Position numbers and translations under genes: made by a program
In this document: in pieces, positions 11,388-12,683 of the stretch
Layout of the letters: each line of letters opens with the position of its first letter
Position numbering within the stretch: position 1 is the stretch's first letter
Assembly: GCA_904063045.1 (NCBI GenBank)
Contig: CAJFCJ010000022.1
Coordinates: 434,001 to 498,000 of the forward strand
Source of the DNA: Dimorphilus gyrociliatus
Taxonomy: Eukaryota; Animalia; Annelida
Length of the DNA stretch: 64,000 bases
Direction of reading: 5' to 3'
Notes under the pieces: model-generated
The model's input: only the letters and a program-made list of their open reading frames with translations
The model's database searches: none
Told to the model about the DNA's origin: nothing

Positions 11388-12683
11388 ATGTTAAGGTCTC
11401 AAAAACTTCTCAAAGCCGTTAAATTCCCCGCTCTTTTAGCGAGGTATCAAAGCACTGCTGAACAAGCTGCTGCAAAAGGCAAGCCACTCCAAATTATGTC
11501 TTCGGCTTTTGTTCAGAAAACGAAGTACATTAGGACAGCCTTCGGAGATCTCTATCCAGATACAACAAGGGGCGATATTGATATGTCATCTTGTGATTAT
11601 CTAAACTATGCTCTTCACCCATATCTCAATAAAATTGATGGTGAATCCATTATTAGACGAGGAAGAATCAGCTTCAATCGCTCCGGTTGCTATGTTCGTC
11701 CTCCAGCATCATCTGTTTATCGTTTGGAAGATGCCATCACTGAACATACTGGTGGATACCAGACTTGCTTTGTTAACTCTGGTACTGAGGCAAATGTTGC
11801 TATATTCCAAGCTATCCTAGAAAATAGGCCAGAGTTACCAATCTATTTAGATAAATTCTCTCACGCCACAATGGTTCTTGGAGCAAATGCTGCTGGAAGA
11901 TCAGATATTCTCACTTTCAAGCACAATAGATTGGACCACCTTAGGAAAATGATCGACGAAAACGGACCTGGGCTGATTGGAGTTGATTCTGTCTACTCTG
12001 CGTACGGAACAGTAGCACCCTTAGAACAACTAACAGAATTAACCAGAGACACTGGGTCTATCTTGTTAGTTGATGAAAGTCACACATACGGTATATGCGG
12101 CGAACACGGAGAGGGTGTAGTTAAAGAATTGGGATTGGAAAAAGATGTTCACGTTAGAACCATGTCGACTGGTAAGGCCTTGGGTGCTGGTGGCGGTGCA
12201 ATTGTTTTAAACGAGGCTGTCGGAGATCATATTGAAGATATCAGAAAAGGAACAAGAATGTCTATTTTCTCCTTGGCTCCTCAAGATTGTATTGCTGACC
12301 GATTATTGGAGACTTTGAGACTACTAAAAGAGGAAAAGTGGAAACGAACCGATCTTTACGACAAGATTAAATATTTCAGAGAATCATGTATGGAAATGGG
12401 CTACAACGGCTTATTTGTAAAAGGTGAAACACCAATTATAACATTCGTTATTGGACCGGTAGATATGGCAACCGAAATGTATAAAGATTTTGTTGAAAAA
12501 CAAATATTTCCCTCTCCTCACGTCTATCCAGCTTCACCAAGAAATCGTACTGCTGTCAGGTTCACAGTCTGTCACGGTGTAACTTATGAACAACTCAATC
12601 ACGTATTGGATACATTGAGAAATCTAAGAGAAAAATACAAGCCAGAAACATGGGTCGACGCTCAGGGGATCGACTTATTTTAA
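11388..12683 (+). CDS. Intronless PLP-dependent alpha-oxoamine synthase (aminotransferase class II), most similar in motifs to bacterial CqsA/LqsA autoinducer synthases; N-terminal mitochondrial-type presequence
   Basis: 431 aa. Motifs SxDYL..A.HP, SGxxAN, His159 (DKFSHA), FKHN..[23 protein letters not shown], VDESH (D229/H232), PLP Lys263 (TMSTGKAL), C-terminal PA...R..RF. First 24 aa are basic/hydrophobic with no acidic residues. Confidence 0.9.
   Translation: [431 protein letters not shown]

What the first reader, a model, noticed from the sequence alone, without database searches (positions are those of the whole stretch)
11388..12683. CqsA/LqsA-like quorum-sensing autoinducer synthase encoded by an animal genome
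SEEN: an intact, coding-intron-free 431-aa ORF between a GPCR and an SLC5 gene, while most neighbours are riddled with short introns. It reads '[36 protein letters not shown]...LLVDESH...[10 protein letters not shown].S..K'. KNOWN (recalled): Vibrio CqsA reads '[36 protein letters not shown]...LLVDESH...ELGLTREVH..TAS..K'. The short GPG-x-I-x-VDS-x-YS-xx-GT segment and DESH are typical of CqsA/LqsA/JqsA. BioF and KBL use (T)E(G)VFSMDGD and D(D/E)AH; ALAS uses FE(S/T)V.SM.G and DEVH. CqsA is a PLP enzyme that condenses SAM with acyl-CoA to make alpha-aminoketone/hydroxyketone autoinducers (CAI-1, LAI-1). Animals normally have only ALAS, GCAT and SPT from this family. INFERENCE: a horizontally acquired bacterial signal synthase retained by an animal, which may make autoinducer mimics that manipulate Vibrio-type microbes or act as an animal pheromone or defence compound.
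Basis: partly seen in the sequence, partly recalled or inferred. Interest (0 to 1): 0.92.

Follow-up and report, generated by a model that had tools for sequence, protein, structure and literature searches.

The report
Animal CqsA-like aminoketone synthase gene
A tiny marine worm carries and strongly transcribes an intact gene for an enzyme whose nearest relatives are the bacterial synthases of Vibrio and Legionella quorum-sensing signals. It belongs to an old, undescribed animal branch of that family, was probably acquired from bacteria, probably works in mitochondria, and its product is unknown.

Summary
Window 11388-12683 (+) is an intact, unspliced 431-aa ORF. It sits in AT-rich animal DNA between a rhodopsin-type GPCR and a spliced SLC5 gene. 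RNA assemblies carry it as an mRNA of about 1.45 kb.

The protein is a PLP-dependent alpha-oxoamine synthase with all catalytic residues. Its best family, solved-structure and fold matches are all CqsA/LqsA. It is not a canonical CqsA:
- it scores 233 bits against an equivalog cutoff of 428;
- it has no sensor-kinase partner;
- it carries a mitochondrial-type N-terminus.

It falls in a clade of 18 sequences (support 100/99). The sequences whose origin could be read come from animal DNA (annelids Dimorphilus and Owenia, brachiopod Lingula) or eukaryotic assemblies. All seven genes with a readable gene span are single-exon. The clade branches between two bacterial clades, as sister to canonical CqsA, though the exact order is not resolved by AU tests.

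The best reading is an ancient bacterium-to-spiralian gene transfer that became a mitochondrial aminoketone synthase. The proposed autoinducer-mimic function is possible but untested.

This scan already followed up the paralogue of this gene on another piece of the same genome (s1-080208). The window gene is the slower-evolving copy, and it keeps its gene neighbour in a related species.

The parts
11337..11344 (+). TATATAAA, a candidate TATA box about 26-46 nt upstream of the observed transcript starts
   Evidence: Sequence read; transcript contigs start at 11370 (X2), 11379 (X3) and 11383 (X4). Its function as a promoter is inferred.
11370..11387 (+). Short 5'UTR (at least 18 nt) with a CACC-ATG start context; no 5'UTR intron or spliced leader seen
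   Evidence: RNA contigs begin here with no joint. The only loose end is an Illumina adapter remnant. D. gyrociliatus is reported to lack trans-splicing (PMC7854359).
11388..12683 (+). Single-exon CDS, 431 aa, CqsA-like alpha-oxoamine synthase (protein P0001)
   Evidence: unspliced in RNA contigs; AlphaFold model mean pLDDT 92.7.
11388..11477 (+). Residues 1-30, a predicted mitochondrial presequence: 6 K/R, 1 D/E, low-confidence helices, with an ARYQST motif shared by P0002 and P0003
   Evidence: Composition; pLDDT 55-59; V. cholerae CqsA residue 39 aligns to query residue 61, so the extension is about 22 aa. No dedicated predictor was run, so targeting is inferred.
12072..12083 (+). D229-E230-S231-H232 (DESH), the PLP N1-binding Asp and O3'-binding His of alpha-oxoamine synthases
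   Evidence: Aligned to DESH of V. cholerae CqsA; Asp and His nearly invariant across 70 sequences. The roles of the residues come from established knowledge of the family.
12174..12176 (+). Codon of K263, the PLP Schiff-base lysine
   Evidence: Aligns with Lys236 of V. cholerae CqsA; Lys236 is the Schiff-base lysine according to PMC9516700.
12684..12826 (+). 3'UTR, at least this far; AATAAA at 12707-12712; the poly(A) site was not determined
   Evidence: X4 transcript contig ends at 12826; sequence.
7048..8103 (+). Upstream neighbour: single-exon rhodopsin-family GPCR ORF (351 aa)
   Evidence: PF00001, 57.1 bits.
13839..15403 (-). Downstream neighbour: exons of a spliced SLC5/SSF sodium:solute symporter gene, convergent with the finding; this linkage is kept in a related species
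   Evidence: PF00474 on three exon ORFs; spliced joints 13304/13363 and 13661/13716; the SSF ORF of L002 matches 13869-14312 at 89% aa identity; loci L002 and L003 carry the orthologue next to SSF.

Best explanation
This is a real, intact, transcribed nuclear gene of the annelid Dimorphilus gyrociliatus. The species name comes from earlier notes of this scan and fits the named paralogue. The gene encodes a PLP-dependent alpha-oxoamine synthase from an animal clade that is nearest to the bacterial CqsA/LqsA autoinducer synthases. That clade most likely arose from one ancient bacterium-to-animal gene transfer, before annelids and brachiopods diverged. The gene then gained a eukaryotic promoter context and an N-terminal mitochondrial presequence, and it duplicated in several lineages. 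Proposed mechanism: the unspliced mRNA is translated in the cytosol and the presequence takes the protein into mitochondria. There the enzyme, a dimer like other members of the family, binds an amino-acid substrate on PLP at Lys263. It condenses that substrate with an acyl-CoA in a decarboxylative Claisen reaction, giving an alpha-aminoketone or enaminoketone. Shown: the gene, its integration, its transcription, purifying selection, the fold, the intact catalytic residues and the nearest family. Inferred: the transfer, the mitochondrial location and catalytic activity. Unknown: both substrates and the product.
For: Gene and expression: the ORF is. An unspliced RNA contig of 1456 nt at word depth 1400, against 17-195 for neighbours, covers 11383-12826. 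A second RNA contig runs from the gene into the spliced SLC5 exons.

Integration: the contig is 839 kb. A DNA-run contig spans the upstream region at uniform depth. CDS GC3 is 33%. A 63%-identical orthologue in another species lies next to the same SLC5 gene.

Selection: dN 0.27 against dS about 2. Against a sibling-lineage transcript there are 8 synonymous and 7 conservative replacement differences.

Enzyme class: PF00155. H159, D200, D229, H232, T258, K263 and R391 are conserved. The model has pLDDT 92.7.

Nearest family: NF005526 scores 232.9 bits, against bioF 177, KBL 150, SPT 139 and ALAS 117. PDB CqsA scores 151 bits against 115 for the next entry. The top 6 Foldseek hits are CqsA. The top ESM Atlas structure matches are bacterial autoinducer synthases.

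Phylogeny: LG+C20 maximum-likelihood tree of 86 rows. The animal clade has support 100/99 and the clade of animal plus CqsA sequences 99/93. The superclade that adds a second bacterial clade (c8) has 100/100, and the topology recurs with extra metagenome sequences.

Both flanking clades are bacterial. CqsA loci carry an adjacent histidine kinase and response regulator. c8 loci sit in a dense operon or beside a hybrid histidine kinase.

Animal distribution: two Owenia fusiformis chromosomes, a Lingula anatina tandem pair and Dimorphilus (two copies). Two further members lie beside a retrotransposon or a 7TM GPCR. The seven genes with a readable gene span are single-exon.

Presequence: the N-termini of the animal clade have 3-7 K/R and 0-2 D/E in the first 30 residues, whereas three of the four bacterial N-termini compared are charge-balanced with 4-5 acidic residues.
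Against: The protein scores well below the CqsA equivalog cutoff. AU tests do not fix the branching order: the animal clade nested within crown CqsA gives p = 0.22, and basal to c8 plus CqsA gives p = 0.37. If it is basal, it is no longer bracketed by bacteria and the transfer inference is weaker. Eukaryotic GCAT, ALAS and SPT sequences were not in the tree; they were excluded only by HMM and PDB scores. Mitochondrial targeting rests on composition and a conserved motif alone. Several members of the clade come from unidentified eukaryotic assemblies or a marine poly(A) metatranscriptome, so the taxon range is incomplete. Word depth is a poor measure of expression. No biochemical data exist.
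Confidence: 0.72

Rival explanations
1. One reading: the enzyme is functionally a CqsA/LqsA. It condenses SAM (or 2-aminobutyrate) with a C8-C12 acyl-CoA to make CAI-1/LAI-1-type alpha-hydroxyketone precursors, which the worm uses to talk to or jam Vibrio- or Legionella-type bacteria, or as its own signal.
For: CqsA is the best match at every level. Bacterial clades on both sides of the animal clade include synthase and sensor-kinase pairs, so the ancestor was plausibly an autoinducer synthase. Nesting within crown CqsA is not rejected (p = 0.22). The catalytic residues are intact. The CqsA chemistry is documented in PMC3376566 and PMC9516700.
Against: Identity to bacterial CqsA is 30-34%, and the score is 233 bits against a 428-bit cutoff. 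No CqsS/LqsS-like gene lies in the window. The mitochondrial-type presequence points to an organelle role. At least one member of the bacterial sister superclade (L094) sits in a lipid-type biosynthetic operon, not a signalling pair, so the superclade is not uniformly quorum sensing. Substrate-determining residues could not be evaluated.
Confidence: 0.15
2. There was no transfer. This is an ancient eukaryotic alpha-oxoamine synthase paralogue, inherited vertically and lost in most lineages, that merely resembles CqsA.
For: A position basal to both bacterial clades is not rejected (p = 0.37). The family is old, being shared by Palaeoannelida, other annelids and a brachiopod. Like ALAS and GCAT, it has a mitochondrial-type N-terminus.
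Against: In a search of 1.84 billion representatives, the only relatives above 288 bits form one small clade, plus one bacterial CqsA fusion protein. Wherever the origin of a clade member could be read, it was animal or eukaryotic. All large look-alike clusters are bacterial. The seven copies with a readable gene span are single-exon, even in the intron-rich Owenia and Lingula genomes. The best tree brackets the clade between bacterial clades at 99/93 and 100/100.
Confidence: 0.1
3. The enzyme has taken over or supplements a canonical mitochondrial alpha-oxoamine synthase job, for example glycine C-acetyltransferase-type or aminolevulinate-type chemistry with a short acyl-CoA, and does not make a long-chain aminoketone.
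For: It has a mitochondrial-type presequence and apparently high transcript depth. Alpha-oxoamine synthases can be promiscuous, for example the ThAOS entries among the PDB hits.
Against: It scores far below the KBL and ALAS models. Whether Dimorphilus keeps GCAT and ALAS could not be checked with these tools. The clade evolves fast (63% identity between species against 89% for the neighbouring gene) and repeatedly yields copies without the catalytic lysine. That pattern does not fit a housekeeping role.
Confidence: 0.08
4. Contamination or misassembly: the ORF is bacterial DNA wrongly joined to animal sequence.
For: Single-exon ORF with bacterial nearest relatives.
Against: The gene lies 11 kb into the window, on a contig of 839 kb. 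Its composition and GC3 match the host. One RNA contig links it to spliced SLC5 exons. It has a syntenic orthologue in another species. Homologues sit on chromosome-scale Owenia contigs, one of them inside the span of a UCH gene. Identity to any bacterial sequence is only 30-34%.
Confidence: 0.01

Closest known systems
CqsA / LqsA / JqsA alpha-hydroxyketone autoinducer synthases (NCBIfam NF005526; PDB 2wk7-2wka, 3hqt, 3kki)
   Same: Same alpha-oxoamine synthase fold: TM 0.86-0.87 normalised to the CqsA chain, 27-28% identity. The same catalytic set is present, with K263 matching Lys236, plus DESH and the GPG-x-I-x-VDS-x-YS block. CqsA is the best-scoring family by HMM, by sequence against solved structures and by Foldseek. 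It is the sister group in the best tree.
   Different: It is a eukaryotic nuclear gene. It scores 233 bits against the 428-bit equivalog cutoff. It lies outside the bacterial clade in the best tree (bacterial monophyly 95/80). No CqsS/LqsS sensor kinase or LqsR is adjacent, whereas the bacterial relatives L028 and L009 have both. It has a basic N-terminal extension of about 22 residues. Its substrates and product are unknown.
Unnamed bacterial 'c8' clade of CqsA-like synthases from metagenomes (P0098, P0119, P0129; loci L092-L097)
   Same: It scores at a similar sub-threshold level on the CqsA model (240-290 bits). It belongs to the same superclade (100/100).
   Different: It is bacterial. One member lies in an operon of acyl-AMP ligase, desaturase, aldehyde dehydrogenase, synthase, sulfotransferase and SDR. 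Another lies next to a hybrid histidine kinase. It branches outside the animal-plus-CqsA pair.
Canonical animal alpha-oxoamine synthases: ALAS, GCAT (KBL) and SPT
   Same: Same PLP fold and reaction type. ALAS and GCAT are also nuclear-encoded mitochondrial enzymes with presequences (established knowledge).
   Different: Scores are much lower: ALAS model 117 bits (cutoff 339), KBL models 111-150 (cutoffs 460-493), SPT 122-139 (cutoffs 500-670); human ALAS2 91 bits and human SPTLC2 60 bits in PDB. Those families occur in all animals, whereas this one is known only from a few spiralians.
Other bacterium-to-animal transfers of metabolic enzymes (as compiled in PMC13342648)
   Same: A single-exon gene with bacterial nearest relatives, host-like composition, eukaryotic expression signals and expression in the animal.
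   Different: This transfer is ancient and shared across phyla, not lineage-specific. The donor family is a quorum-sensing signal synthase. No mention of such a case was found in the compendium's main text or in the literature searches.

Membership tests
Alpha-oxoamine synthase subfamily of fold-type I PLP enzymes | Aminotran_1_2 (PF00155) domain and the alpha-oxoamine synthase fold | tested here: met
   PF00155 scores 84.8 bits. The AlphaFold model has pLDDT 92.7. TM normalised to the target is 0.80-0.90 for CqsA, BioF, KBL, SPT and bacterial ALAS chains, and 0.71-0.80 for the longer eukaryotic ALAS chains.
Alpha-oxoamine synthase subfamily of fold-type I PLP enzymes | Schiff-base lysine and the His / Asp / His PLP-binding residues | tested here: met
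   K263 aligns to CqsA Lys236. H159, D229 and H232 are conserved.
Alpha-oxoamine synthase subfamily of fold-type I PLP enzymes | C-terminal-domain arginine that binds the substrate carboxylate | tested here: met
   R391 is nearly invariant across 70 aligned sequences. Its role is assigned from knowledge of AONS, SPT and ALAS.
CqsA/LqsA autoinducer synthase (NF005526 equivalog) | Score at or above the curated equivalog cutoff (428 bits) | tested here: not met
   232.9 bits. All animal-clade members tested score 185-277 bits. Bacterial members score 345-599 bits.
CqsA/LqsA autoinducer synthase (NF005526 equivalog) | Phylogenetic position inside the canonical clade | tested here: inconclusive
   The best tree places it as sister, with bacterial CqsA monophyly at 95/80. 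Nesting within the crown group is not rejected (AU p = 0.22).
CqsA/LqsA autoinducer synthase (NF005526 equivalog) | Genomic pairing with a CqsS/LqsS sensor kinase (with or without LqsR) | tested here: not met
   tblastn of the L028 kinase and regulator against the whole window found nothing. The neighbours are a GPCR and SLC5.
CqsA/LqsA autoinducer synthase (NF005526 equivalog) | Condenses SAM or 2-aminobutyrate with C8-C10 acyl-CoA to give CAI-1-type products | not testable with these tools
   This needs enzyme assays. The chemistry is described in PMC3376566 and PMC9516700.
Animal ALAS / GCAT / SPT | Reaches the family model thresholds | tested here: not met
   ALAS 117.1 against 338.55; KBL 149.6 against 460 and 110.7 against 493; SPT 139.2 against 500.
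Horizontally acquired animal gene | Physically integrated in host DNA and expressed | tested here: met
Horizontally acquired animal gene | Nested among donor-domain sequences in a supported tree, with a narrow recipient distribution | tested here: inconclusive
   The best trees bracket it between bacterial clades (99/93 and 100/100). A basal position is not rejected (p = 0.37). Known carriers are annelids and a brachiopod, plus unidentified eukaryotic assemblies.

The most novel reading that the evidence does not exclude
Spiralian animals have kept a bacterial quorum-sensing signal synthase since before annelids and brachiopods diverged. They use it to make CAI-1/LAI-1-like alpha-amino- or alpha-hydroxyketones that act between kingdoms, by activating or jamming CqsS/LqsS-type receptors of surface or gut bacteria, or that act as an endogenous lipid signal of the animals themselves.
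Probability: 0.15. Interest if true: 0.92.

Novelty: new variant of a known kind. Interest (0 to 1): 0.68.

Why it matters
Animals are thought to have only three alpha-oxoamine synthases: ALAS, GCAT and SPT. This would be a fourth lineage. It is confined to a few spiralian phyla, and its closest relatives make the alpha-hydroxyketone autoinducers of Vibrio and Legionella.

If it still makes related molecules, it would be an animal-encoded route to bacterial-type signals, which bears directly on host-microbe chemical communication. If it does not, it is a clean example of an ancient transferred enzyme redirected to mitochondria and put to a new metabolic use.

The family has repeated duplications, and some copies have lost the catalytic lysine. 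Both questions can be tested directly, because the gene is short, intron-free and apparently well expressed in a laboratory-culturable worm.

No description of this family was found in the literature searched.

Tried and rejected
1. Contamination was rejected on linkage, synteny, composition and RNA evidence.

2. A spliced 5'UTR or spliced leader, suggested by note s1-084022, was not found. Four RNA assemblies start at 11370-11411 with no joint, and the only loose end is an adapter. The joints at 10943 to 11155-11188 come from dispersed repeats that are also seen in the DNA run.

3. I tested for conserved GPCR-synthase linkage as a possible receptor-synthase pair. The window GPCR and the GPCR on L006 share only 27% identity (E = 2e-5), so there is no evidence for it.

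4. No remnant of a bacterial sensor kinase or regulator is in the window.

5. A second word-index search with the 17-sequence profile added no new members.

6. The first metagenome scan, with a single c8 protein, found nothing; the profile scan worked.

7. The primary CqsA structure and mechanism papers (PMC2847429, PMC3077805) are not held. I therefore could not compare substrate-pocket residues.

8. I could not name the organisms behind several assemblies and runs: GCA_022702835.1, GCA_022702875.1, ERZ26052378, ERZ25069853 and SRR23372229.

9. I could not check whether Dimorphilus keeps GCAT and ALAS, because only the window is accessible.

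Full report
**Observation.** The ORF at 11388-12683 (+) is real: 431 aa, from ATG to TAA.
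That alignment shows the shared GPG-x-I-x-VDS-x-YS-xx-GT-x-APL block, DESH and the lysine.
- The flanks are as described. A single-exon rhodopsin-type GPCR ORF lies at 7048-8103 (+). Exons of an SLC5/SSF symporter lie at 13839-15403 (-).
- One more spliced minus-strand gene lies at about 9800-10428.
- The surrounding DNA is 25-38% G+C. The CDS has 41% G+C and 33% GC3, against 30% in the flanks.

**It is an expressed, integrated animal gene.** Four public assemblies that behave as RNA show spliced joints with CT..AC ends in the neighbours, with introns of 93, 58 and 54 nt.
- The same assemblies carry the ORF as one unspliced piece. X4 has a 1456-nt contig at word depth 1400 covering 11383-12826, while neighbouring genes are at 17-195.
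- In X2 a single contig runs from 11370 through the ORF into the spliced SLC5 exons.
- Transcript contigs start at 11370-11383, with no joint and no leader. This fits the reported absence of trans-splicing in D. gyrociliatus (PMC7854359). It does not support the spliced-5'UTR idea in note s1-084022.
- A TATATAAA sits at 11337-11344, and the start context is CACC-ATG.
- A DNA run spans the upstream region in one contig at uniform depth.
- A 63%-identical, gap-free orthologue (P0002) lies next to the same SLC5 gene in another species (loci L002 and L003). The SLC5 exon is 89% identical between the two species.

Contamination is therefore excluded.

**Selection.** Against P0002, dN is 0.27 and dS is about 2, which is saturated. 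A transcript about 98-99% identical (15 differences over about 1150 nt) from a coral metatranscriptome differs at 8 synonymous sites. It also differs at 7 conservative replacement sites (R/K, T/A, E/D, V/I). The gene is constrained, but it evolves much faster than its neighbour.

**What the protein is.**
- Pfam gives PF00155.
- NCBIfam ranks the alpha-hydroxyketone autoinducer synthase model NF005526 first at 232.9 bits. BioF follows at 177, KBL at 150, SPT at 139 and ALAS at 117. The equivalog cutoff for NF005526 is 428, so the protein is not an equivalog.
- Among solved structures, V. cholerae CqsA is best at 151 bits. The next entry scores 115. Human ALAS2 scores 91 and human SPTLC2 60.
- An AlphaFold model built on a 70-sequence alignment is confident, with mean pLDDT 92.7. 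Residues 1-30 are low.
- Foldseek against PDB puts six CqsA chains first, with target-normalised TM of 0.86-0.87. Other alpha-oxoamine synthases follow at almost the same TM.
- The ESM Atlas look-alikes are all bacterial, and autoinducer synthases come first by structure.
- K263 aligns with CqsA Lys236, the Schiff-base lysine. H159, D200, D229, H232, T258 and R391 are conserved.

**Relatives.** The word-index search and the exhaustive search of 1.84 billion representatives give a small top tier. Below about 260 bits there is a continuum of bacterial proteins.

The top-tier members, wherever they could be placed, are in animal or eukaryotic DNA:
- Dimorphilus gyrociliatus protein CAD5126774.1 (P0003, 57% identity).
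- Two loci on chromosome-scale Owenia fusiformis contigs. One lies within the span of a UCH-family gene on the opposite strand.
- A tandem pair in Lingula anatina, 88% identical to each other.
- Contigs carrying a non-LTR retrotransposon or a 7TM GPCR.
- Eukaryotic assemblies with contigs of several Mb.
- A marine poly(A) metatranscriptome.

The assembly identities were checked. Wherever a gene span could be read on genomic DNA (seven genes), the coding sequence is a single exon.

Earlier notes of this scan identify the window's genome as D. gyrociliatus. They also show that the 1290-nt paralogue on another piece was already followed up. That length matches P0003 (429 codons plus stop). The window gene is thus the second Dimorphilus paralogue. 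It has the shorter branch (0.22 against 0.63), and it keeps its gene neighbour in the related species.

**Phylogeny.** I built a careful maximum-likelihood tree with 86 rows, model LG+C20+F+G4, rooted on 18 other alpha-oxoamine synthases.

| Group | Support (UFboot / SH-aLRT) |
|---|---|
| 18 animal/eukaryote sequences as one clade | 100/99 |
| Animal clade plus canonical CqsA | 99/93 |
| 42 canonical bacterial CqsA sequences as one clade | 95/80 |
| Superclade with the second clade, c8 | 100/100 |

- Canonical CqsA members score 345-599 bits on NF005526. Examples from Nitrococcus mobilis and a Rhodospirillaceae MAG have an adjacent histidine kinase and response regulator.
- The c8 clade scores 240-290 bits, and it is bacterial. 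Metagenome loci that fall inside it sit in two kinds of context. One is a dense operon of acyl-AMP ligase, desaturase, aldehyde dehydrogenase, synthase, sulfotransferase and SDR. The other is next to a hybrid histidine kinase.
- The nearest bacterial genome loci are 30-34% identical. They come from Pseudomonadota such as Paraburkholderia, Chitiniphilus, Collimonas, Nitrococcus and Legionellales.

The order of the three lineages is not settled. AU tests do not reject the animal clade nested with crown CqsA (p = 0.22). They also do not reject it basal to c8 plus CqsA (p = 0.37).

The best-supported picture has the animal clade bracketed by bacterial clades. Together with the narrow taxon range and the single-exon structure, it makes one ancient transfer the most parsimonious reading. 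That transfer would have occurred before the annelid-brachiopod split. This is an inference, not a demonstration.

**How it probably works.** The animal-clade N-termini are basic, rich in Ser and Thr, and almost free of acidic residues. They have 3-7 K/R and 0-2 D/E in the first 30 residues. Three of the four bacterial CqsA N-termini compared are charge-balanced, with 4-5 acidic residues.
- The three closest sequences share an (Y/F)QST motif after an Arg.
- The window protein extends about 22 residues beyond V. cholerae CqsA.

I therefore propose import into mitochondria. There the enzyme would use the acyl-CoA pool for a PLP-dependent decarboxylative Claisen condensation with an amino acid, giving an alpha-aminoketone. 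For CqsA, the amino donor is SAM (less efficiently 2-aminobutyrate) and the acyl donor is decanoyl- or octanoyl-CoA (PMC3376566, PMC9516700). Whether the animal enzymes keep these substrates is unknown. I give that about 15%.

**Comparison and novelty.** The protein works like an alpha-oxoamine synthase, and its closest family is CqsA/LqsA. It fails two tested defining features of that family (the equivalog score and the sensor-kinase pairing), and a third (clade position) is inconclusive. I therefore file it as a new, animal, presequence-bearing sister lineage and not as a CqsA.

Searches of the held literature found no description of animal CqsA-like genes. These included the Dimorphilus genome paper and the main text of a 2026 compendium of metazoan transfers.

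Its interpretation is partly supported: the origin and nearest family hold, while the function is untested and the gene is neither recent nor unique to this animal.

Noticed in passing
Proteins P0115 (Owenia, locus L090:8001-9281), P0029 (L091:1473-2783), P0031, P0032 (L089:112-1344): Four members of the animal clade have lost catalytic residues. The Schiff-base Lys is replaced by Pro, Asn or Phe in three of them, and the PLP-stacking His or the DESH His is replaced. These look like pseudoenzyme paralogues on long branches.
   Followed up: partly
L008:2136-3434 and L008:8001-9224 (Lingula anatina): A tandem pair of single-exon copies, 88% identical, both with intact catalytic residues and basic N-termini.
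   Followed up: partly
L005:8001-9302 (Owenia fusiformis): The Owenia copy P0027 lies inside the span of a UCH-family (ubiquitin hydrolase) gene on the opposite strand, probably within an intron.
   Followed up: no
L094:2431-11664 (metagenome contig Ga0316189_10001724): A bacterial operon of acyl-AMP ligase, fatty-acid desaturase, aldehyde dehydrogenase, CqsA-like synthase, sulfotransferase, DUF1254/DUF1214 and SDR. It looks like a gene cluster for a sulfated long-chain amino-lipid, not a quorum-sensing pair. A clade-mate (L096:6974-8176) instead sits beside a hybrid histidine kinase (L096:8186-9997).
   Followed up: partly
window 11400-12742 against run X6 (coral metatranscriptome): A transcript about 98-99% identical (15 differences over about 1150 nt) occurs in a coral-associated metatranscriptome. 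An identical fragment occurs in an 'invertebrate metagenome' RNA run. This suggests Dimorphilus-like worms, possibly a sibling lineage, in those samples.
   Followed up: partly
window 10917-10947 and 11165-11195: A short CT-rich stretch and an AT-rich stretch upstream of the gene reach a depth of about 6000 in the DNA run, against 254 around them. They give false 'joints', so they are dispersed repeats.
   Followed up: partly
window 7048-8103 (+): A rhodopsin-family GPCR encoded by a single 351-aa ORF with no coding intron. It is only weakly similar (27%) to the GPCR near the synthase on L006.
   Followed up: partly
window 13869-14312 (-) against L002:3889-4341: The SLC5 exon is 89% identical in protein between the two species, while the adjacent synthase is only 63% identical. 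The synthase evolves unusually fast for a conserved-synteny pair.
   Followed up: partly
Protein P0026 (802 aa, representative search): A fusion of two alpha-oxoamine synthase domains in one protein. The C-terminal domain is a bona fide CqsA, and the whole protein scores 697.7 bits on NF005526.
   Followed up: no
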